From assembly GCF_001194135.2 (NCBI RefSeq), contig NC_068988.1:3743245-3807244 (forward strand): a stretch of 64,000 nucleotides of DNA, given 5' to 3'. Below the pieces are notes generated by a model, which saw nothing but the letters and a program-made list of their open reading frames with translations, was not told the DNA's origin and searched no databases. This stretch comes from Octopus bimaculoides (lineage: Eukaryota). Made by a program: the position numbers and the translations under genes. Position 1 is the first letter of the stretch; each line of letters opens with the position of its first letter. This document shows, piece after piece, positions 22,892-62,520 of the stretch.

Positions 22892-22946
<55 letters not shown>

Positions 22947-23274
22947 CGTTAGGAAGGGCATCCAGCTGTAGAAACTCTGCCAAATCAGACTGGAGCNNNN
23001 NNNNNNNNNNNNNNNNNNNNNNNNNNNNNNNNNNNNNNNNNNNNNNNNNNNNNNNNNNNNNNNNNNNNNNNNNNNNNNNNNNNNNNNNNNNNNNNNNNNN
23101 NNNNNNNNNNNNNNNNNNNNNNNNNNNNNNNNNNNNNNNNNNNNNNNNNNNNNNNNNNNNNNNNNNNNNNNNNNNNNNNNNNNNNNNNNNNNNNNNNNNN
23201 NNNNNNNNNNNNNNNNNNNNNNNNNNNNNNNNNNNNNNNNNNNNNNNNNNNNNNNNNNNNNNNNNNNNNNNNNN

Positions 23275-23353
<79 letters not shown>

Positions 23354-28759: not shown

Positions 28760-29047
28760 ATAACCATGAGTAGAATATGGAGATAAGGACAAATGACTGA
28801 GATCTTCAGCGATGTGCCATGCTTGAGTAGAAGATCTATCAAGCCAAATGAAATGAAAGTGCAGACATGGCAGATACTGGGGTCATGCAATTGGCACCCA
28901 TTACACTCTCAAAGTGGTTGGCATTAGGAAGGTCATCCAGCAGTAGAAACCATGCTAAATCAGACTGGGGTCTGGTGCAGCTGGCCAGCCCTGATCAAAC
29001 TGTCCAACCCATGCCAGCATGGACAATGAACGTTAAATGATGATGAT
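28760..29047 (+). mobile_element. Family A element with RTE-type tail
   Basis: ...cacccattacactctcaaagtggttggcattaggaaggtcatccagc...gaacgttaaatgatgatgat. Confidence 0.8.
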
Positions 29048-36560: not shown

Positions 36561-37399
36561 CTTCTCTTCAAAAGCTTTTAAGCACAAATTTCAATTTAAT
36601 CTTAATTTACACTATCTGGAACAAATTTGCAGAAATTTTCATTAATAAATATCCATTTTTTAAAAAGTTATGTGGGAACAAATTTTGATGGAGCAGAGTT
36701 CTGCAGTTATACCATAAATTTACTAAATGAGTGATATGAAATGAATAAAGACTTCAAAGAAAAATTAGACGTAACATATCAGAAAAATTATAGAAATTGG
36801 GAATCCAATGTGTAAATATTATTTAGTGATGAGCAGAAAACTGCCCAGAGTATCCGATACATGTGTCCATCTTATTCTTTCACTTACATTGGTCACTGGA
36901 TTGTGGCCATGATGACATGTTGCCTTGTTGGAGTGGGGTTAGCTGGTCAGACCAATGCCAGTACTAGCACACACACATCAAATTCATCAGATTCTGTCAA
37001 ACTATCCAACTCATGCTAATATGGAAAACAGATGTTAAATGGTGATGATGAAGATGATTGTGATGATATCTATATATATATATATAATGGCGGTGCCCCA
37101 GCATGGCCACAGCTCATGAGCTGAAACTAGATAAAAAATGAAAAATATATATATGTATGTGTGTGTGTGTGTGTGTGTGATCATCAACAGTTCACATATC
37201 TGTAACAGATAATTATAAATCCCAGCCAACATAAAACGCAGCATGGTAATTTATTTATCCAAACAAATTATATCAATGATCAATTGGAGCGGACATGTCT
37301 GTGCATTGGTGTGTATGTGTGTATCTAACAGTGTATATAATGAATGTCTAGTTGGGTGTATAAGTATGTATGTATATGTATAGTATCTATAGTGTATGG

Positions 37400-37589
37400 C
37401 ACGTAAAAAGCACCCACTACACTCTCAAAGTGGTTGACGTTAGGAAGAGCATCCAACTGTAGAAACCTTGCCAGATCAGATTGGAGCCTGATACAGCCTT
37501 CTGGGTTTCCAGCCCTCAGTCAAACCGTCTGACCCATGCCAACATGGAAAGCAGACGTTAAACAACAACACTGACAATGATGATGATGT
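37400..37589 (+). mobile_element. Family A RTE-tail element inserted into the left arm of the RPB1-associated inverted repeat
   Basis: cacgtaaaaagcacccactacactctc...gacgttaaacaacaac...gatgatgatg. Removing it rejoins gacca|ccatacacta, which is contiguous in the right arm at 38607-38621. Confidence 0.85.
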
Positions 37590-37610
37590 TGGTCCTAATT
37601 CTCCATAAGC

Positions 37611-38567
37611 TTATGTTTCTTTTTCATCATCATTAGTTGAGTTGTAAATCAGACTGGCTGGAGAAGGTTTTGGTAAACTAGGAGAATATGTGGGACTGGC
37701 TGGAGAATATTTAGGACTTGTGGAGCTGGATGTAGGGCTGTGTTTCAGACTGGTGGGTAAGGAACTCAGACTGCTAGGACTGTAGCTAGGAGAGCCAGGA
37801 TTATAGTTGAGGTTGGTGGAAGAGTATGAAGGACTAGTTGGAGAATATGAAGGGCTGGTAGCACTGTAATTAGGAGAGGAAGTAACTGGGGCTTGCTGGA
37901 CTATAACTAGGGCTAGTCAGAGAATAAGATGGACATGTTGGGGAATAAGAAGGACTGTTTGGAGAGTTAGAAGAAGTGGGGCTGTAGCTAGGACTGGTTG
38001 GAGAATACAAGGGGGGAAGTAGGATTAAAACTAGGACTGGTAGGAGAGTATGATGGACTAGTTGGGGAGTAGGAAGGGCTGGTTGGAGAATGAGTGTGAC
38101 GTTGGGCTACAAGAAGGACTGATCGATGAGTAAGATGGTGATGTTGGGCAATAGCTTGGTGAAGATGGAGAATAAGCAGGACTTGGAGGGGAATATGATG
38201 TGCTTGATGGAGGATAGCTTGGGCTGTGTGGTGTCATAGCTGCTGACACAGGTACATAAACAGAAGATTTAGGTGAATAAGTTGGAGACAATTGCTCCAC
38301 CAGGGCTTGGAATGTAAGCACTGGCTGGCAATGACGGAGATATCCACTAAGGGACGACCAGTATGTGGTGTAGCCAGGACTGCAACTACTTTCACTTGCA
38401 GCTGACGGTGAAAAGCCAGCACCACCAGGAGTCATTCCACTTCCAATAACAGGGGACCAAGGGCCGATATAACCAGGTGTGGCATGTGTGAGCCATGGTG
38501 TGGTGACATTCTAGTCACAAGACTTCCACCAGATCCAAAGAACATTCCAGTGCTCACACCAGTACTG
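37611..38567 (-). pseudogene. POLR2A: Frameshifted orphan copy of the RNA polymerase II largest subunit 3' end (linker, CTD heptad repeats, acidic tail)
   Basis: Across frameshifts the minus strand reads GVSTGMFFGSGGS...MSP/TPWLTHATPGYIGPWSPVIGSGMTPGGAGFSPSAASESSCSPGY.../SPSLPASAYIPSPGGA/LSPTYSP..., then about 28-30 heptads (several exact YSPTSPS), ending [11 protein letters not shown] (TAA at 37611-37613). This matches the conserved RPB1 linker TGMFFGS...TPW...WSP...GMTPG.AGFSPSAAS and the CTD. At least five frame disruptions; no upstream catalytic domains in the window. Confidence 0.92.
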
Positions 38568-38718
38568 ATGATGATGATAAAGAAACATGAGGTTATGGAG
38601 AATTAAGACCACCATACACTACATAAACTATGCATATACATATGTACTTACACACACACACACACACACACACACAGAGACACACACACACACACACACA
38701 CCAATGCACAGACATGTC
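38564..38718 (+). repeat. Inverted second copy of the RPB1 terminal codons, stop and downstream sequence
   Basis: act gat gat gat gat aaa gaa aca TGA ggttatggagaattaagacca matches the minus strand of 37637-37590 at 43/48. The next block matches 37/44 and the final block acacacacacaccaatgcacagacatgtc 28/29. Both arms stop at GACATGTC (37292-37299, 38711-38718). Confidence 0.9.
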
Positions 38719-38796
38719 TGAGAAAGAAGCACACTCTAAAGTATTAGAGCAGCAAGTTTTTAGAAAGTTAACTTTTAACTTCCTGGAACCTGATGC

Positions 38797-39077
38797 CAGT
38801 GGTGAACTGGGTCTAAAAATATTGGTTGCCAGGAGACTAAGGGGGCCCACCTGCAACTACAGTGCTATCATCTAATTTAATTGTTTTTGTTTTTTTTGTT
38901 AAAAGTATTCTTTTCAACTGTCTACAAACACAGCCAGGCAGAAATAATTAATGCATTCTTCCAGGAGTGAATAAAGAACTCTCAAACTTGAGGGGATGGG
39001 CCCCCATATATGGATTCTAATGATACAGGGGCCCACTTGTCATCGGGGAAGCTGGCAACCTGGCCAGTCCGCCACTG
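38797..39077. mobile_element. hAT-like MITE, 281 bp
   Basis: TIRs cagtggtgaactgg / ccagtccgccactg match 12/14. Flanking 8-mers cctgatgc and tctggtac differ only by three transitions, consistent with a decayed 8-bp TSD. Confidence 0.6.
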
Positions 39078-42000
39078 TCTGGTACAACCCTCTGGCTTAT
39101 CAGTTTTAGTCAACCCGTCTAACACATGCCAGCATGGAAGCCAGACGTTAAGTGATGATGATGAGGATGATATATATTTGTGTAAATAAGTATATACATG
39201 TATACGTAGGTGTACTCGAGTTCAATGACAACTACAACCAGTTTTTTTCCCTCACTTAAGATTGATAGAGTTGGAAAGAAAACTTTTATTTTGAAATATA
39301 TATCTTGAAGTTCCACCTGAGAACATATTAACTGACATATAGTAAAGACACAATTACAGATGATGAGTTTAATATTTGTGAAAGCTTATATTAGTAGAGA
39401 GTGAATTCAGTTGAAAAATAAACACATGCCTTCAAAAACTGTATTTAATGAAGTGAGTCAGATGTGATTTTGAAATATTTATTTACAAGCTACAGACTTA
39501 TAATGTTTCAATGGCTTCAAGTTATTCACCCAAAATTTAATATTTTAAACCAGAAATGGTTCTGAATTATGTTTTATAACAAGAAATATGTTTTTATTTT
39601 TCCTTTCTTTTTTTATTTCTGTGATGCTGGAGAATATAATTCAAATTGATAAAACTATGATATTTTCATAGATTGAAAAATGGGTAAGGAACTTAAAAAT
39701 TGAAAATTCATTTTGAATTTTGGTTTTATTAAATTTCAGTTTGAAAATATTCCCAGCACAATTTTTTGTCTGCATTTGTTGGTATTTAATGCTTTTTAAA
39801 AAAAAACATTTTGAAATGTCCAAGTCAGAATTTTCTAAGTAATATATATTTTTATCTGAAACACATCAATTTGATAGACTTAGTCAATGTGAATGTCAAA
39901 ATATAGCAGCACGGCCTTAGCCAGCAGAAAGAAACAAGAGTAGGGGAAGAAGGGGTTTGGCAAACCATGGTGAAAGTTGAATCACACCTTTATCAGTAAA
40001 AACAAAAATCTGGTAAGGATTGAGCTGCCATCTTATAAGAACCTTTTACACTACTTTTGGACTCTTTTTTGGTATCAAGTTGCGGCAGGAGCTTTCTCAA
40101 GCTTACAAAAAGATTTCCTGCTTTTCATATCTGAAAGTTAGATGTTCGCACTTTAGGAATATTTAGTCTGTTTAGAAAATACTGGGGTTAGAAATAGATA
40201 TTTCTGGTCTGATGGTGGTTTAAAGGAAAGTAATTGGTATGGAGCAGGAAGTAATTTGTCTGTTCTGATTTGTACTGTGTGATTTTGCATATATTTTCCT
40301 ATATAGTGGCATTTCGGCCATCTTTATGTTCTGAGTTCAAATATTGTTGAGGTTGGCTGTGTCTTTCACCCTTCCAGGGTTAATGAAATAGGTACCTGTG
40401 AGTACTGGTGGTTGATGAAATCGACTAATCCCGACCCCATCAAAAATTCAGGCCTCGTGTAGAAAGGATACACTGTGGTCATTATTACATGAAGCTAGCT
40501 GGGATTTGATGAGTGAGGTTAGATGGAGCATGTTCGAAATGACCTCACTATCAAAAGGTACACAAGCACATGTTGTAGCACTAATACACTGAAAGGGGGT
40601 CAGGACGTTGGTATTTCAATATGTGGGTTAATTTTATTTGAAGATACCCCAATCTTGAGTAGAGAATAAAAGTGGTGCAGGTAAAACTTAGTTGCATCAT
40701 TATCTTAAGAAACCCAAGAACATAACTGTGGAGACCATTCAAATGGAGGAAGATCCTTCAAATGAAAGGTGGCTGTATTCTTATGTATTTTACAGAGAAG
40801 CAAAAGGCACACTGTTTTTTTCCAGTGGTTGATGAAATAAATAAAGGCGATGAGGTACCAAAGAATATCTTGAAATGTGTTTCAAGTAAAGCTGAATGTG
40901 TACAAATTTCTGCATCATCTCTATTCTGACTGCTTCATAGTACGGTGGAGAAACAAGCTTTCATAAGTAGAAATCGAGTTTCCTATTGATGTGTTATCTC
41001 CAAGCCAGAGTAAAATGGAAGTTGTGTTGACCAATAAACCTTTAACTATAAGTGACAATCATATCTGGAATTAAAAATTGAAAAAATCGTCAATATCAGT
41101 TCTGGTTTGTGCTGTAATTACTGGTATATTTCAATATGCTCCAAAATATGTTCCCACTTACTACACCGTGGGGGGCCAGGTTGGAATGTTTAGAATTAGT
41201 TAATAAAAATTTCTTTTCTCAGTTATTTCTCTCGGTCTCTGCTGAACACATTTGCTGAGTCTGTTAAACACAAATCTATCTATAAAATATATGACAAAGT
41301 AGATTTATGAATAAGTCTTTTCAGAAAGTGTGTTCCAACTAAATCCACCTTCCTCTGTATTATGAAGTAAATTTTCAAATGTTGAATCTACTTCACTCAT
41401 TTCATATAATTCATTGCAAAACTATTAAACGGTGTTTTTCTTTTTAACACAAGCAAGGATTACTGATTGTGGCTGTCTTGCATATAATTCCGAAATTGAA
41501 TGCTTCCTTCTAAAATTCATTTAACTCTATCATTCAAATACAACTTACTTAAATAGAAAATAAGAAAATTCTTCAAGTAAAATTAGTATTTTTACTATTT
41601 TACCATTTCTATGTATTACTACTTCAATATATCAGAATGGTAACTGATTAAATATTAGAAATAGCTGAATATTCTACATATTGAGAGTTAAACTCTCAAT
41701 TAAACATTTTGTGAAACTGAAACTTCTTTAGACATAAATATATTATGTTTACAATGATGGAAAGATCGTATTGTCAGGCAAGACTAACAAACATATCATC
41801 AGAAATCAGTGGGGAAATGTAAACCTCTTACAAGCTTATAAGTGAATTTTTGTTAAAGAGTAAAACTAACTTTGGGAATGAGTAACATTGGTTTCACCAT
41901 CTCCCTATCCCAAGCCTGATCAAGTTTGTTTCTAGTCTCTAAGAATGTGTTATTCTTTTATATGGAGACATCCTAACTTTACTAACTCATTTGGCATTAC

Positions 42001-42936: not shown

Positions 42937-43130
42937 TCATCATCATCATCATCATCGTTTAACGTCCGCTTTCCATGCTAGCATGGGTTGGACGATTTGA
43001 CTGAGGACTGGTGAAACCGGATGGCAACACCAGGCTCCAGTCTGATTTGGCAGAGTTTCACAGCTGGATGCCCTTCCTAACGCCAACCACTCAGAGAGTG
43101 TAGTGGGTGCTTTTACGTGTCACCCGCACG
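42937..43130 (-). mobile_element. Young family A element (RTE-type tail, CpGs retained)
   Basis: (cat)n cgtttaacgtccgctttccatgctagcatggg...gctggatgcccttcctaacgccaacc...ttttacgtg. Confidence 0.85.
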
Positions 43131-55068: not shown

Positions 55069-55105
55069 GATAGAGAAAGCTTATCTATCTATTGGTTTAC
55101 ACACA

Positions 55106-55605
55106 CACAAGAGTTGGCTGAAGAGTCAATAGGCTGACCAAGACACTCCCATGGAATCTGACCAAATGAGACCCCCTTGCAGTTCTCACACTTCTTCCAT
55201 CCGTTTTGCAGTATTTGGATCCCATTGGTCAAGAAGCTTTCATTCTGTCGGTCAAAAAACTCATAAACAGCAGATATGGCATCATCATCATCACTGCGAT
55301 AATGGTTTCCAGCCAAGTGTTTTTCCATGTTGGGGAACAGATGTAGCCATATGGGGGTGGGGTGATCAACCACTTCAAGGCTGCAGTCATGCACAGCATC
55401 CAATGAAACTAAGGACTTATGTACTGGAGTATTATCTTGATGAAACAAGACCTCTTCCATCAGTTTTCTTGAGCATTTGGTCTTGATAACCTTTTGTGAC
55501 TGCTTCAGTAAGTTGGCATAGTAGACATCATTGATGGTGTGGCCTTTTTTGAAGATAGCCAATAGACACAATGCCTTTTGCATCCCAAAAAACCGAGGCC
55601 AAAAA
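55106..55605 (-). mobile_element. Mariner (DD34D-type) transposase 3' remnant with one TIR
   Basis: ASVFWDAKGIVSIGYL/HTINDVYYANLL...VLFHQDNTPVH...VVDHPTPIWLHLFPNMEKHLAGNHYRSDDDDAISAV...GWKKC. The YSPDLAPSD motif is deleted. TIR-like cacaagagttggctgaagagtcaatagg at about 55106-55133. Confidence 0.85.
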
Positions 55606-55924: not shown

Positions 55925-56490
55925 CCCTGAATGCAGGGGACATGTGGAGACTAGAGAGGAATGAAGCTCGTATGTTCCACTGGGTGTGCAGCCATTAGTG
56001 CACATGTATAACGGAATACTAGTGTATTGAGGGAAATAGATGCAGTGTGCAAGAGAGAATACTGTGCTGGTTTGGTCGTGTGATGCATATGGAAGTAGGT
56101 AGTTGCATACAGAAGTGCCGATCACTTAAAATGGATGGAACTGATGAAAGGAAGACATGAGATCGAGAACTGAAGCCTGGGATATCCAGTGCTTTACTAT
56201 ACCTAAGATGATGTGTCCACTACAGCAGTATTAATACTGATAATGGTGCCATGTAAACAGCACTGGTGCTGGTCTCACATTAAAAGCATTGGTAGTTGTG
56301 CCATTGAAAAATCCCCCACTGCACTCTTTAAAGTGGTTGGTGTTAGGAAGGGCATCCAGTCATAGAAATCACACCAGGGTAGGCAATGGAATCTGGTGTG
56401 GTACCCGGTCTTACCAGCTCCTGTCAAATCATCCAACCCATGCCAGTATGGAAAACGGACGTTAAATGATGAGGATGATGGTGCTGATGA
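55925..56490 (+). mobile_element. 5'-truncated RTE-clade LINE: end of ORF plus 3' UTR and (GAT)n tail
   Basis: DMWRLERNEARMFHW and VQERILCWFGRVMHMEVGSCIQKCRSLKMDG match the RTE RLxWFGHVxRM C-terminal motif, followed by the family A tail ...ggaagggcatccag...ggacgttaaatgatgaggatgatg. Confidence 0.8.
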
Positions 56491-59981: not shown

Positions 59982-60014
<33 letters not shown>

Positions 60015-60029
60015 TCTCTTTTTATTCTT

Positions 60030-60176
60030 TTTCTGTTCATTTCCTCGTGTTCCTTTCTGTTGAAGAGTGTAGACTCCAGATGTAACAGACTTTCTCACCT
60101 TCCTGAGCATCAAACTAATACGCCTGCTTGTTGTTTACACACCAACCTTCGCCTTTTGTTTTTCTGTAAATTTCAA

Positions 60177-60179
<3 letters not shown>
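60030..60179 (+). mobile_element. Second copy of the Penelope-like terminal repeat with a more decayed hammerhead
   Basis: cctttCTGTTGAagagtgtagactcCAGATGTAacagac...ctgagcatcaaactaat aligns with the minus-strand copy (ctgagtgtcaagctaat at about 59420-59440). Confidence 0.45.
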
Positions 60180-60235
<56 letters not shown>

Positions 60236-60236
60236 N

Positions 60237-60590
60237 NNNNNNNNNNNNNNNNNNNNNNNNNNNNNNNNNNNNNNNNNNNNNNNNNNNNNNNNNNNNNNNN
60301 NNNNNNNNNNNNNNNNNNNNNNNNNNNNNNNNNNNNNNNNNNNNNNNNNNNNNNNNNNNNNNNNNNNNNNNNNNNNNNNNNNNNNNNNNNNNNNNNNNNN
60401 NNNNNNNNNNNNNNNNNNNNNNNNNNNNNNNNNNNNNNNNNNNNNNNNNNNNNNNNNNNNNNNNNNNNNNNNNNNNNNNNNNNNNNNNNNNNNNNNNNNN
60501 NNNNNNNNNNNNNNNNNNNNNNNNNNNNNNNNNNNNNNNNNNNNNNNNNNNNNNNNNNNNNNNNNNNNNNNNNNNNNNNNNNNNNNNNNN
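60237..60590. other. Assembly gap (largest of 11 N runs)
   Basis: Other N runs: 6724-6733, 9479-9488, 10157-10433, 12670-12679, 22997-23274, 32550-32559, 51805-51822, 52488-52527, 54873-55023, 59972-59981. Most abut TA/TG microsatellites. Confidence 0.95.
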
Positions 60591-60643
<53 letters not shown>

Positions 60644-61703
60644 GTATGTATGTATACTGACAGAGACAAAATCAACCTGGTTGACAAATGTAGAGGAACG
60701 AACTCAAATAATTACAGAAATATTTAGTCTGCTGCACTTTATTTTGTACTAAATGCCACATCATCATCATCATGCTTAATATTCTTTTTTTCCCCCATTG
60801 ATATGGTTGAGTTTCATCATCTGTCTCAGTTATGTGTTACAGGAAAAAACCCAACCGGTGCATATATGAGAGTATTGCATGAGTGTAAGAGCCAGGGCGC
60901 CTTTGGGGTGTCAGATGACACAATTTGGTAAAGGGTACAAATTTGATCATACCTGCAGGGGTTTGAACTTAGAAGGTAAAGGGACTTTACTTACTACTAG
61001 ATATGACATTTTATGTGGTGTTGGTAGTCTGATGTGGTTATCATACAGCAACGATATTGACGCTGATGATGATGATGATGACAATGGTAACAATGATGAT
61101 GATGCTGATGACGGGGATGTCGATGATGACGATGATGATGATAATGATTGTGAAAAGAAATTGTAAAAATATTCTAAAATGTTTATCTATCTGAAACCAA
61201 GAAAATAAATTGATTTTTATCATTGTCCCTTCATTAATATTAGACTAAAATATTCAAAACAATTTATCTTAGTATCCTGAAAAATAGTTTACTTTTTATT
61301 ATTCAACTCAACTCTTCTATACCCCCCCTCCACACACACACACATAAACACAGCACACACACGCACATACAAACACAATACAAATAATGCACACACAAAA
61401 ATCTAGCCAAACGTGATTTGCTTGTTGTTTTATATTTAAAATAAAATGACATTATTGTTGTTGTAAGTTTTTCTTGAAATTGGGAAGTAAATCTTCAAAG
61501 TTCAACAGTTCTGTCTGTGTTTCTGCTGATATATTTGCAAAGTATTTCAAGAACAATACAAATGATTAATCTTGTGAAATGTAGCAATTTATAAACGTTT
61601 GATTAATTCTTCTTACAGGAACCTATGCAATATGTCACTCAGCTATTAGGGAAAAGATATACTACACACTATGGAAACAGTGACCATTGTCAAGATTTAT
61701 CAT

Positions 61704-62217: not shown

Positions 62218-62520
62218 CTATCATCATCATTTAACATCCATTTTCCATGCTAATATGGGTTGGACATTTTGATACCAGGCTCCACTTGTCCATCTTGGCA
62301 TGGTTTCTATGGCTGGAGGCCCTTCCTAATGCCAACCATTTTACAAAGTGTACCGGGTGCTTTTCATGTGGTACCAACACAGGTACATTTTACATGGCTT
62401 CAACACAGGTGCTTTTCATGTGATCCAGCACAAGAGCTTTTAACATGACACCTCCACAAATGGGTGCTTGCGTGACACCAACACCAGTGGTGTCACCCAG
62501 CAGCTAGCAAGACAAGGATC
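62218..62520 (-). mobile_element. Family A element with an internal array of 21-26-bp subrepeats
   Basis: (cat)n ttaacatcc...ggcccttcctaatgccaacc, then repeated ggtgcttttcatgtggtaccaacaca-like units at about 62356-62490. Confidence 0.7.

What the first reader, a model, noticed from the sequence alone, without database searches (positions are those of the whole stretch)
37292..38718. The CTD copy is bracketed by an inverted duplication of its own 3' end, with 8-bp palindromes at the junction and both termini
Seen: a 155-bp plus-strand arm (38564-38718) repeats the last codons, stop and downstream sequence of the minus-strand copy (blocks of 43/48, 37/44 and 28/29). The two pieces meet head-to-head at CAGTACTG (38560-38567), which reads into RPB1 linker sequence on one strand and into the terminal codons on the other. 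Both arms end at the same palindrome GACATGTC. There is no poly(A) and no obvious TSD. A later RTE-tail insertion split the left arm. Inference: standard twin priming inverts but does not duplicate the 3' end, so this suggests reverse transcription primed from the same 3' end at both target nicks and joined by microhomology. Penelope-like elements are known to leave inverted terminal copies, so a host mRNA mobilised in trans by such machinery is one candidate. Alternatives are a fold-back DNA repair event or capture between TIRs. A read-through transcript would form a hairpin matching the RPB1 stop/3' UTR region.
Basis: partly seen in the sequence, partly recalled or inferred. Interest (0 to 1): 0.8.

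Follow-up and report, generated by a model that had tools for sequence, protein, structure and literature searches.

The report
Dead RPB1 retrocopy with inverted tail copy
This is an old, dead copy of the tail end of the RNA polymerase II large-subunit (RPB1) mRNA, with a second 158-base copy of its own 3' end attached upside-down to its cut-off front; that is an unusual but explicable by-product of reverse transcription, not a mobile element with designed ends.

Summary
The sequence features are real. A decayed RPB1 linker/CTD copy lies on the minus strand (38565 down to at least 37255). A plus-strand arm (38564-38721) repeats its last 8 codons, its stop codon and about 130 nt of 3' UTR in inverted orientation. 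RNA reads show that the arm is the true RPB1 3' UTR and not a dispersed repeat. Independent runs of the same species and contigs from two related species carry the junction.

GACATGTC is not a shared terminus. It lies inside a 12-nt palindrome native to the parent UTR. The right arm ends 1 nt after that palindrome, while the direct copy runs at least 35 nt further. The junction palindrome is simply what a 2-nt (AC) overlap join produces.

The copy carries 5-6 nt of the upstream exon, where the gene itself has an intron, so it came from spliced mRNA. Each arm has 5 private changes against the parent and none shared, so the arms arose together or nearly so.

Best reading: two cDNAs were primed at internal sites with no poly(A), one on each side of a single break, and joined 5'-to-5'. 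Fold-back self-priming and a later DNA-level repair event remain possible. No poly(A), TSD or expression was found. Interest is moderate to low.

The parts
37611..38565 (-). Decayed, 5'-truncated RPB1 coding copy: linker (STGVSTGMFFGSGGS...), CTD heptads and the end T-N-D-D-E-K-E-T-stop (stop codon 37611-37613). It has several frameshifts and stops, and lacks about 320 nt of CTD repeats that the parent gene has.
   Evidence: Translation. RPB1 homologues carrying PF04998/PF05001, E=3e-53. Parent mRNA reads lie on it at 90-95% identity, with every variable site showing the parent's letter. Parent-gene contigs of species A and E carry about 320 extra nt at 37728/37740.
38560..38565 (-). GTACTG, the last nucleotides of the upstream (penultimate) exon of the parent mRNA. 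This marks a spliced-mRNA origin. The 5' truncation lies only 5-6 nt upstream of the last exon junction.
   Evidence: mRNA reads fit the window up to 38565 and then continue CAAGCATGCC.... Genomic parent contigs of species A, B, D and E diverge after 38560 into TGCAAATAAATTT..., whose reverse complement ...tttatttgcag| is an intron 3' splice site.
37255..37610 (-). 3' UTR of the direct copy (the 'left arm' plus its continuation). The part paired with the right arm is 37586-37610 plus 37290-37399. The copy then continues to at least 37255, and possibly to about 37207. The true 3' end is unresolved. An AATAAA (reverse complement) lies at 37250-37255.
   Evidence: Parent mRNA reads cover 37335-37376 at depth about 66. 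About 8 reads run on to roughly 37255 with 6 differences in 37 nt. Two reads and one species D contig match 37207-37257.
37400..37585 (+). Later insertion of a SINE-like dispersed repeat with an (ATG)n tail, splitting the left arm. It is flanked by a short ATG(G) duplication.
   Evidence: The parent mRNA is continuous across this site (loose end GTTTCTGTAGTGTATGTTGGTCCTAATTCT). Other copies lie at 42938-43122 (81%), 3805-3961, 28894-29037 and elsewhere.
38564..38721 (+). Inverted second copy (right arm) of the parent mRNA: ACT(GAT)4 AAA GAA ACA TGA (stop codon 38588-38590) plus about 130 nt of 3' UTR. A (CA)26 microsatellite has expanded inside it at 38650-38701.
   Evidence: About 120 parent mRNA reads fit 38566-38638 with 5 differences. 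Their loose end beyond 38638 matches the reverse complement of the left arm at 37337-37366. Microsatellite from TRF. The end of the match to the parent is inferred.
38564..38565 (.). Head-to-head join. The 2 nt AC are shared by the linker copy (...CCAGTAC) and the arm (ACTGATG...). The 8-nt palindrome CAGTACTG (38560-38567) results from this join.
   Evidence: Linker reads fit up to 38565. Arm-read depth rises over 38565-38574, and the parent's ACT(GAT) run matches the window from 38564. Palindrome check. Species B has 38562 G>A.
38709..38720 (.). CAGACATGTCTG, a 12-nt perfect palindrome native to the parent 3' UTR. The right arm ends 1 nt after it. The left copy has the mutated form CGGACATGTCTG at 37290-37301.
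   Evidence: The parent's letters at 37289 (T) and 37291 (A) come.

Best explanation
A single ancient retro-insertion of spliced RPB1 mRNA produced two cDNAs, one from each side of the same chromosomal break.

- The long cDNA (now on the minus strand) started at an internal site at least 165 nt into the 3' UTR. It ran about 1.4 kb and stopped 5-6 nt past the last exon junction.
- The short cDNA started about 130 nt into the 3' UTR, 1 nt after a native 12-nt palindrome. It ran 158 nt, to the (GAT)4 codons.
- The free 3' ends of the two cDNAs annealed at a 2-nt microhomology (AC/GT) and were filled in. This gave a head-to-head structure with both 3' UTR ends facing outward.
- No poly(A) was used. 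That points to an enzyme or repair route that primes internally, such as two-strand priming of the Penelope-like type or a non-L1 LINE reverse transcriptase, rather than classical L1 poly(A) priming.
- Later events: frameshifts, loss of about 320 nt of heptads, a SINE insertion in the left arm, a (CA)26 expansion in the right arm and, in two related species, a 1-kb deletion that removed the left arm.

Shown: parentage, splicing signature, join, extents, equal and independent divergence of the arms, and sharing across species. Inferred: simultaneity, the two-sided priming itself, and the enzyme.
For: - Parentage: the arm and the direct copy both match parent mRNA reads.
- Spliced origin: 38561-38565 match the mRNA where the gene has an intron.
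- Timing: in a three-way comparison over 69 columns the right arm has 5 private changes, the left arm has 5 and none are shared. Both arms keep the ancestral (GAT)4, which the parent genes of species B, D and E also have (no gaps in those contigs). Arm divergence from the parent (about 7%) equals that of the coding part (29 of 395).
- Position: the inverted piece sits exactly at the truncated 5' end of the copy, as expected if it formed while the insertion was being resolved.
- Age: the junction is present in species B and C, so the event is old and germline-fixed.
- Precedent: a PLE protein nicks and extends both target strands and starts reverse transcription at two internal sites (PMC11167929). 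PLE insertions often carry an inverted 5'-truncated copy at the 5' end and a 30-40-bp extension on one end only, and can move host genes in trans (PMC8557442).
Against: - Evidence for spliced origin rests on only 3-5 informative nucleotides.
- There is no TSD and no poly(A), and the left end of the copy is not defined, so hallmarks of target-primed insertion are missing.
- One RNA cannot easily template both cDNAs, because the long one must pass through the region copied by the short one. Two RNA molecules or strand displacement are needed.
- No reverse-transcriptase gene or hammerhead motif lies nearby.
- In species D I saw copy-type contigs for 37586-37739 and 38392-38552 but none across the junction or right arm. 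A D contig of the right flank also has 542 nt to the left of 38797 that do not align with the window. The arm may therefore be younger than the copy.
- The count of zero shared changes only limits a shared history to roughly the first third of the copy's age. This is my own Poisson estimate from 10 changes.
Confidence: 0.45

Rival explanations
1. Fold-back self-priming. Only one cDNA was made. After the RNA was removed, its free 3' end (...CCAGTAC) annealed to a GT about 950 nt back in the same strand, next to the (ATC)4 run. It was extended for 158 nt along its own 5' part and was then ligated to the other side of the break.
For: - This gives exactly the observed order and the 2-nt join.
- Inverted duplications formed by self-annealing of 3' overhangs at 2-bp microhomology are documented at L1 insertion breaks (bioRxiv 10.1101/2024.12.14.628481).
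- It needs only one RNA and one priming event.
- It explains why the arm is shorter than the direct copy's UTR.
Against: - The published inverted-duplication cases involve small hairpins of genomic DNA, not a loop of about 950 nt.
- Nothing explains why synthesis would stop 1 nt after the palindrome, at least 35 nt short of the end of the single strand.
- After about 7% divergence the sequence cannot distinguish this from two-sided priming.
Confidence: 0.22
2. Later DNA-level rearrangement. An ordinary, longer 5'-truncated retrocopy was inserted first. Later a break or stalled fork at 38565 was repaired by microhomology-mediated template switching (MMBIR, FoSTeS or fold-back repair). This copied 158 nt from 950 bp away in inverted orientation and deleted the copy's more 5' part.
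For: - Species D shows no contig over the junction or arm although it has the copy, and its right-flank contig does not continue into window-like sequence.
- The join has 2-nt microhomology.
- The arm ends next to a 12-nt palindrome, a plausible break or switch site.
- No TSD is found.
Against: - The arms share no derived substitutions (5 private to the right arm, 5 to the left, 0 shared).
- The arm is as diverged from the parent as the coding copy is.
- The arm lies exactly between the copy and the flank, which would require a coincident deletion.
- The evidence from species D is an absence among short contigs, not an observed alternative structure.
Confidence: 0.17
3. Capture of two separate RPB1 cDNA fragments during end-joining repair of a spontaneous double-strand break, in opposite orientations, with no retrotransposon endonuclease involved.
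For: - There is no TSD and no poly(A), and only minimal microhomology at the internal join.
- The two outer ends fall at different internal UTR positions.
Against: - Two fragments of the same mRNA, both starting within about 35-85 nt of each other in the 3' UTR, is an unlikely coincidence unless priming was coupled.
- The tools available here offered no direct test.
Confidence: 0.08
4. A DNA transposon or foldback element whose terminal inverted repeats captured an RPB1 fragment. Alternatively, the arms are a dispersed repeat present twice by chance.
For: Only the superficial appearance: inverted ends that finish in a palindrome.
Against: - The arms are the parent gene's own codons, stop and UTR.
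- They are unique in the window apart from the microsatellite.
- They are at single-copy depth in DNA contigs.
- There is no TSD.
- The left 'TIR' continues as parent UTR beyond the supposed terminus.
Confidence: 0.02

Closest known systems
L1 twin priming (5' inversion of L1 insertions and processed pseudogenes; Ostertag and Kazazian 2001, as summarised in PMC12016303)
   Same: Two cDNAs of one RNA species in opposite orientation within one insertion. They are joined at their 5'-truncated ends by microhomology, and one of them is primed internally.
   Different: - In twin priming the inverted piece covers RNA further 5' than the direct piece, and any overlap is short (median 12 bp, quartiles 4-17).
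- Here the inverted piece (158 nt) lies wholly inside the direct piece's range and at its 3' end.
- No poly(A), L1-type TSD or T-rich target site is seen.
Penelope-like element insertion architecture (PMC8557442; PMC11167929)
   Same: - An inverted 5'-truncated copy directly adjacent to the 5' end of the main copy, giving inverted repeats around the unit.
- No poly(A).
- Reverse transcription started at internal RNA sites on both target strands.
- An extension present on one end only (here at least 35 nt).
- A microsatellite next to the insertion.
- Reported trans-mobilisation of host genes.
   Different: - The cargo is a host mRNA with no PLE sequence, pLTR or hammerhead.
- The extension length is not known to be 30-40 bp.
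- The copy is spliced, whereas PLE-moved host genes were reported to retain introns.
- No PLE reverse transcriptase was shown to act here.
Inverted duplications from remodelling of L1-induced break ends (bioRxiv 10.1101/2024.12.14.628481)
   Same: An inverted duplication formed at an insertion break by self-annealing at 2-bp microhomology and fill-in.
   Different: Published cases duplicate flanking genomic DNA through small hairpins. Here the duplicated segment is part of the cDNA itself and the loop would be about 950 nt.
Inverted-repeat pseudogenes that yield hairpin RNAs and endogenous siRNAs (known from mouse oocytes; cited from my own knowledge, not checked here)
   Same: An inverted duplicate of gene sequence that could fold into a long hairpin if transcribed. 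The predicted duplex energy of the arms is -170 kcal/mol with the SINE removed and -126 with it.
   Different: No transcription of the copy was detected in the one RNA run sampled. The arms are 13% diverged and interrupted. Two species have deleted one arm, so nothing suggests selection.

Membership tests
Processed pseudogene (retrocopy of a spliced mRNA) | Lacks the parent gene's introns | tested here: met
   38561-38565 (AGTAC) follow the mRNA, whereas the gene has intron sequence TGCAA... at that point. This is only 3-5 informative nt, because the rest of the copy lies within one parent exon.
Processed pseudogene (retrocopy of a spliced mRNA) | 3' poly(A) tract at the parent's cleavage site | tested here: inconclusive
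   No T-run lies to the left of the copy on the plus strand. However, the copy's 3' end (37207-37255) and the parent's cleavage site could not be fixed.
Processed pseudogene (retrocopy of a spliced mRNA) | Target-site duplication flanking the insert | tested here: not met
   No direct repeat was found between 38716-38770 and 36880-37300 at 8-14 nt with 0-2 mismatches allowed. Age and the uncertain left end weaken this test.
L1-type twin-priming inversion | The inverted segment derives from RNA upstream of the direct segment, with at most a short overlap | tested here: not met
   The inverted 158 nt (last 8 codons to about UTR +130) lie entirely within the direct segment. Typical overlap is a median of 12 bp.
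L1-type twin-priming inversion | Microhomology at the internal junction of the two cDNAs | tested here: met
   2-nt AC overlap at 38564-38565.
Penelope-like element (PLE) insertion | Encodes or derives from a PLE (RT plus GIY-YIG ORF, pLTR, hammerhead ribozyme) | tested here: not met
   The unit is RPB1 sequence throughout. Rfam found no hammerhead or any other family in the 64 kb. No ORF of 130 aa or more looks like a reverse transcriptase on reading the translations; only one of them (55089-55583) was scanned against Pfam. It is therefore not a PLE. It could at most be a PLE-mobilised host RNA.
Penelope-like element (PLE) insertion | Inverted 5'-truncated copy adjacent to the 5' end, giving flanking inverted repeats | tested here: met
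   Architecture as described in PMC8557442.
Penelope-like element (PLE) insertion | A 30-40-bp 'tail' on one end, reflecting two internal reverse-transcription start sites | tested here: inconclusive
   The direct copy extends at least 35 nt beyond the point where the arm ends. The true length may be up to about 85 nt.
TIR DNA transposon or foldback element with captured cargo | Family-specific terminal inverted repeats found at many loci, plus a TSD | tested here: not met
   The arms are parent-gene sequence at single-copy depth and are unique in the window. No TSD was found. The left 'terminus' is not a terminus.

The most novel reading that the evidence does not exclude
A host mRNA (RPB1) was reverse-transcribed in trans by a Penelope-like element protein. 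The protein nicked both target strands and started at two internal 3' UTR sites next to an AC-rich, palindrome-bearing stretch. This left the PLE signature on a cellular gene copy: head-to-head copies, a one-sided tail and no poly(A). If so, such 'PLE-type retrocopies' would be an unrecognised class of gene copies in PLE-rich invertebrate genomes, one that poly(A)/TSD-based pseudogene finders miss.
Probability: 0.18. Interest if true: 0.6.

Novelty: new variant of a known kind. Interest (0 to 1): 0.35.

Why it matters
As it stands this is one dead pseudogene with no sign of function. Its value is as a mechanistic fossil.

The structure is a spliced host-mRNA copy with no poly(A). Its 5' end carries an inverted copy of its own 3' end, the two outer ends lie at different internal UTR positions, and the internal join uses 2 nt of homology. 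Classical L1 twin priming does not predict this. Either two-strand internal priming, recently shown for a Penelope-like element protein in vitro, or fold-back of the first cDNA does.

If a genome-wide screen found more such copies, it would show which reverse transcriptase makes gene copies in a genome where L1-type machinery is not dominant. It would also give natural products against which to check the in vitro PLE model.

The locus also shows long inverted repeats decaying: two species have deleted one arm, and a microsatellite has expanded inside the other.

Tried and rejected
1. Retrieving the parent RPB1 gene and its 3' UTR through protein searches. This failed.
   - The frame-corrected copy was swamped by CTD heptads.
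   - The linker alone found no candidates.
   - A read-corrected linker found nothing above 61% identity.
   - As a result the copy's 3' end and the parent's poly(A) site stay unresolved.
2. TSD search: nothing found.
3. Rfam over the whole window: no hammerhead, tRNA or other family.
4. Pfam on the pseudo-CTD and on ORF 55089-55583: no family reported, so RPB1 identity rests and on the RNA reads.
5. Empty orthologous site: attempted with contigs of four other species. The joints table was flooded by microsatellite and SINE joints, and no clean empty site was seen. Species E shows only parent-type letters and may lack the copy.
6. Left-flank mapping: the TG-rich sequence attracts noise and gave little.
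7. Dispersed repeat or TIR reading: rejected.
8. Assembly artefact: rejected.
9. Hairpin transcript: no copy-specific RNA reads in the one run sampled at about 6%. Small-RNA data were not examined.
10. Shared indels between the arms, (GAT)4 and a 6-nt unit, as evidence for a later duplication: rejected. The parent genes of species B, D and E also have the (GAT)4 length, and the 6-nt region varies by slippage in every lineage.
11. All 8 read-laying runs were used, so the structure in species D could not be followed further.
Full report
**What is in the sequence**

The minus strand from 38565 down to 37611 reads as the linker and C-terminal heptad domain of the RNA polymerase II largest subunit. 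It begins STGVSTGMFFGSGGS and runs through many YSPTSPS-like repeats to T-N-D-D-E-K-E-T-stop. The reading frame is broken by several frameshifts and stops. A frame-corrected translation finds RPB1 fragments carrying Pfam PF04998/PF05001 at E=3e-53.

- 37586-37637 against 38564-38615 (52 nt, 88%);
- 37353-37399 against 38612-38658 (47 nt, 83%);
- 37292-37322 against 38688-38718 (31 nt, 97%).

blastn E-values are about 1e-13. The right arm encodes T-D-D-D-D-K-E-T-stop followed by UTR.

The left arm is interrupted at 37400-37585 by a repeat with an (ATG)n tail. This repeat has several other copies in the window. A (CA)26 microsatellite lies inside the right arm.

**Is it real DNA?**

Thirteen runs of the same species (organism A), from at least four studies, hold 70-93% of the sampled words of 37200-38800. 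A contig from a 2015 run matches 38524-38648 exactly. Contigs from two related species span the junction:
- species B: 38396-38825, and 38562 G>A in two contigs;
- species C: 38413-38600.

The inverted junction is therefore not an assembly artefact, and it predates the split of these species.

**Is the arm the true RPB1 3' UTR?**

Yes. RNA reads of organism A were laid at 80% likeness.
- They cover the CTD copy at 90-95% identity.
- At every variable site they carry the other letter, for example 153 of 153 reads at 37675. They therefore come from the parent gene, not from this locus.
- About 120 reads of the same parent-type kind (90-95% alike) cover the right arm at 38566-38638 with five differences. 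Beyond 38638 they continue TACTTATACACACAACTAGACATTCATCAT, which is the reverse complement of the left arm at 37337-37366.
- On the left arm they cover 37335-37376 and then continue GTTTCTGTAGTGTATGTTGGTCCTAATTCT. The parent UTR is thus continuous where the copy has the SINE-like insert.

In DNA contigs the arms are at single-copy depth. Apart from the microsatellite they are unique in the window.

**RNA or DNA origin?**

- The mRNA reads fit the window up to 38565 and then continue CAAGCATGCCAGGGCC. Its reverse complement encodes PSNVGPGML, joined to GTGVSTGMFF.
- Genomic contigs of the parent gene in species A, B, D and E fit only to about 38560. They then read TGCAAATAAATTTAAAATG, whose reverse complement ...tttatttgcag| is an intron 3' end.
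- The copy therefore carries 5-6 nt (GTACTG) of the upstream exon directly joined to the last exon, which is the mark of a spliced template.
- Only 3-5 of these nucleotides are informative. The rest of the copy lies inside one parent exon.
- A DNA-level duplication would have to break exactly at the exon edge and add a filler that happens to match the mRNA. I therefore treat RNA origin as strongly favoured.
- When the read-derived changes are applied, an open parent frame is restored across the linker, and the parent C-terminus reads ...SPASPIYSPTDDDDDKET-stop.

**The termini**

- Parent reads cross that motif on the left. They keep matching to about 37255 with six differences in 37 nt: 37264, 37265, 37270, 37274, 37289 and 37291.
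- The parent therefore reads ...CAGACATGTCTGATCCAATTGA...
- The right side reads CAGACATGTCTGA and then unrelated flank (GAAAGAAGC).
- So the right arm ends at 38721, 1 nt after a perfect 12-nt palindrome (CAGACATGTCTG) that belongs to the parent UTR.
- The direct copy continues at least 35 nt further. Two substitutions in the left copy (TGA to CGC) created the illusion of a common end.
- The direct copy's true 3' end could not be fixed. Two RNA reads and one species D contig match 37207-37257. An AATAAA (reverse complement) lies at 37250-37255. No T-run and no TSD is seen.

**The internal junction**

- Linker reads fit up to 38565, and the arm sequence (ACT GAT...) begins at 38564. The two pieces therefore overlap by AC.
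- The palindrome CAGTACTG is native CAGTAC plus TG from the arm.
- In species B it reads CAATACTG, so it is not conserved.
- Perfect 8-nt palindromes occur about 21 times per kb in this window, counting microsatellite tracts.

**Timing of the duplication**

Over 69 alignable columns of parent, right arm and left arm, there are 5 changes private to the right arm, 5 private to the left arm and none shared by the arms against the parent.
- Both arms have (GAT)4. Organism A's parent has (GAT)5. The parent genes of species B, D and E align to the copy without a gap there, so (GAT)4 is ancestral.
- Arm-to-parent divergence is about 7%, the same as for the coding part (29 differences in 395 nt).
- The arms therefore separated from the parent, and from each other, at about the same time. 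By my own Poisson estimate, zero shared changes out of ten limits any shared history to roughly the first third of the copy's lifetime.

**Comparative structure**

- Species B and C contigs join the left flank (about 36888 and 36851) directly to 37893. A roughly 1-kb deletion has removed the left arm, the end of the CTD and the neighbouring repeats.
- Species D is more distant: its left flank shows about 7% substitutions and further indels. It has both parent-type and copy-type contigs over 37586-37830, so the long direct segment is ancestral and the B/C deletion is derived.
- In species D I found no contig over the junction or right arm. A D contig of the right flank has 542 nt to the left of 38797 that do not align with the window. 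This is unresolved and is the main threat to the view that the arm arose at insertion.
- Species E shows only parent-type letters and may lack the copy.

**Mechanism**

The layout is two cDNAs of one mRNA species lying head-to-head. Their 3' ends face outward, the outer ends fall at different internal UTR positions, there is no poly(A), and the 5'-5' join uses 2 nt of homology.

Classical L1 twin priming is the nearest textbook model but fails on a defining point.
- The inverted piece should come from further 5' on the RNA.
- Overlaps should be short (median 12 bp; PMC12016303).
- Here the inverted piece lies entirely within the direct piece's range.

Two published processes predict the observed form.
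1. Two-strand priming. A purified Penelope-like element protein nicks and extends both target strands. It starts reverse transcription at two internal RNA sites with no homology to the target, which explains the one-sided 30-40-bp 'tail' (PMC11167929). PLE insertions often carry an inverted 5'-truncated copy at their 5' end, favour microsatellites and can move host genes in trans (PMC8557442).
2. Self-annealing of a single-stranded 3' end at 2-bp microhomology, with fill-in. This has been seen as inverted duplications at L1 insertion breaks (bioRxiv 10.1101/2024.12.14.628481).

I favour two-sided internal priming in one integration event (0.45). The alternatives are fold-back of a single cDNA (0.22), a later DNA-level template switch (0.17), break capture of two cDNA fragments (0.08) and a TIR element (0.02).

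Which enzyme acted is not shown. There is no reverse-transcriptase ORF or ribozyme in the window.

The repeat content and the run dates suggest an octopus genome. That is my guess only, since organism names were coded. If it is right, such genomes hold active Penelope, RTE, Dong-R4, CR1 and L1-Tx1 families (PMC13282606).

**Function**

None is indicated.
- No read carries the copy's own letters in the RNA run sampled.
- The arms are 13% diverged and interrupted.
- Two species have lost one arm.
- The arms could still pair if transcribed (-126 kcal/mol with the SINE). Small-RNA data were not examined.

**Verdict**

The finding is a real and carefully observed structure. It is an ancient RPB1 processed pseudogene whose truncated 5' end carries an inverted copy of its own 3' end. 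The palindromes are incidental, and the 'same terminus' claim is wrong. I class it as a new variant of a known kind, of moderate to low interest unless more examples are found.

Noticed in passing
window 36889-37892 (against contigs of species B and C): The orthologous loci in two related species join about 36888 (species B) or about 36851 plus 43 nt (species C) directly to 37893. A roughly 1-kb deletion has removed the left arm, the CTD end, the SINE and the neighbouring repeats. TTG microhomology lies at the breakpoints. This is consistent with instability of the long inverted repeat.
   Followed up: partly
window 38560-38565: The retrocopy's 5' truncation lies only 5-6 nt upstream of the parent's last exon-exon junction. 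Chance is plausible: a few per cent, by my own rough estimate assuming about 28 junctions in a 6.5-kb mRNA. I have no mechanistic explanation.
   Followed up: partly
window 37728-37740: Parent-gene contigs of species A and E carry about 320 nt (about 15 heptads) more CTD sequence here than the copy does. Either the copy lost repeats or the reverse transcriptase slipped.
   Followed up: no
window 37620-37634 / 38567-38578: The parent gene of organism A has (GAT)5, encoding five aspartates before K-E-T-stop. Both arms and the parent genes of species B, D and E have the (GAT)4 length. This is a recent codon-repeat gain in a highly conserved protein's tail. The same triplet repeat forms the tail of the local SINE family.
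   Followed up: partly
window 38650-38701 and 37154-37179: A (CA)26 microsatellite has grown inside the right arm, where the parent UTR has only ACACACA-type seeds. An unrelated (TG)n tract lies about 30-75 nt to the left of the copy. Both flood read mapping with spurious joints.
   Followed up: partly
window 36986-37075, 37400-37585, 39079-39175, 42938-43122, 3805-3961, 28894-29037, 56307-56466, 62273-62370: Many copies of one SINE-like family ending in ...CAGACGTTAAA followed by a (GAT/ATG)n tail, at 70-81% identity to one another. RNA reads pile up on them to thousands-fold depth. Rfam recognises no tRNA, 5S or other RNA family in the window.
   Followed up: partly
window 55089-55583 (minus strand): A 164-aa ORF with motifs that recall a mariner/Tc1-type transposase C-terminus (FHQDNTPVH ...). 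This is from memory only. Pfam reported no family.
   Followed up: partly
window about 10100-10450, 22900-23300 and 60000-60700: Runs of N (assembly gaps), each embedded in (TA)n / (TG)n microsatellites, seen as X-runs in ORF translations.
   Followed up: no
species D contigs over 37619-37625 and 37781: The species D orthologue of the copy has its own deletions: 5 nt and 2 nt in the K-E-T/stop region, and one 21-nt heptad unit. This confirms independent neutral decay in each lineage.
   Followed up: no
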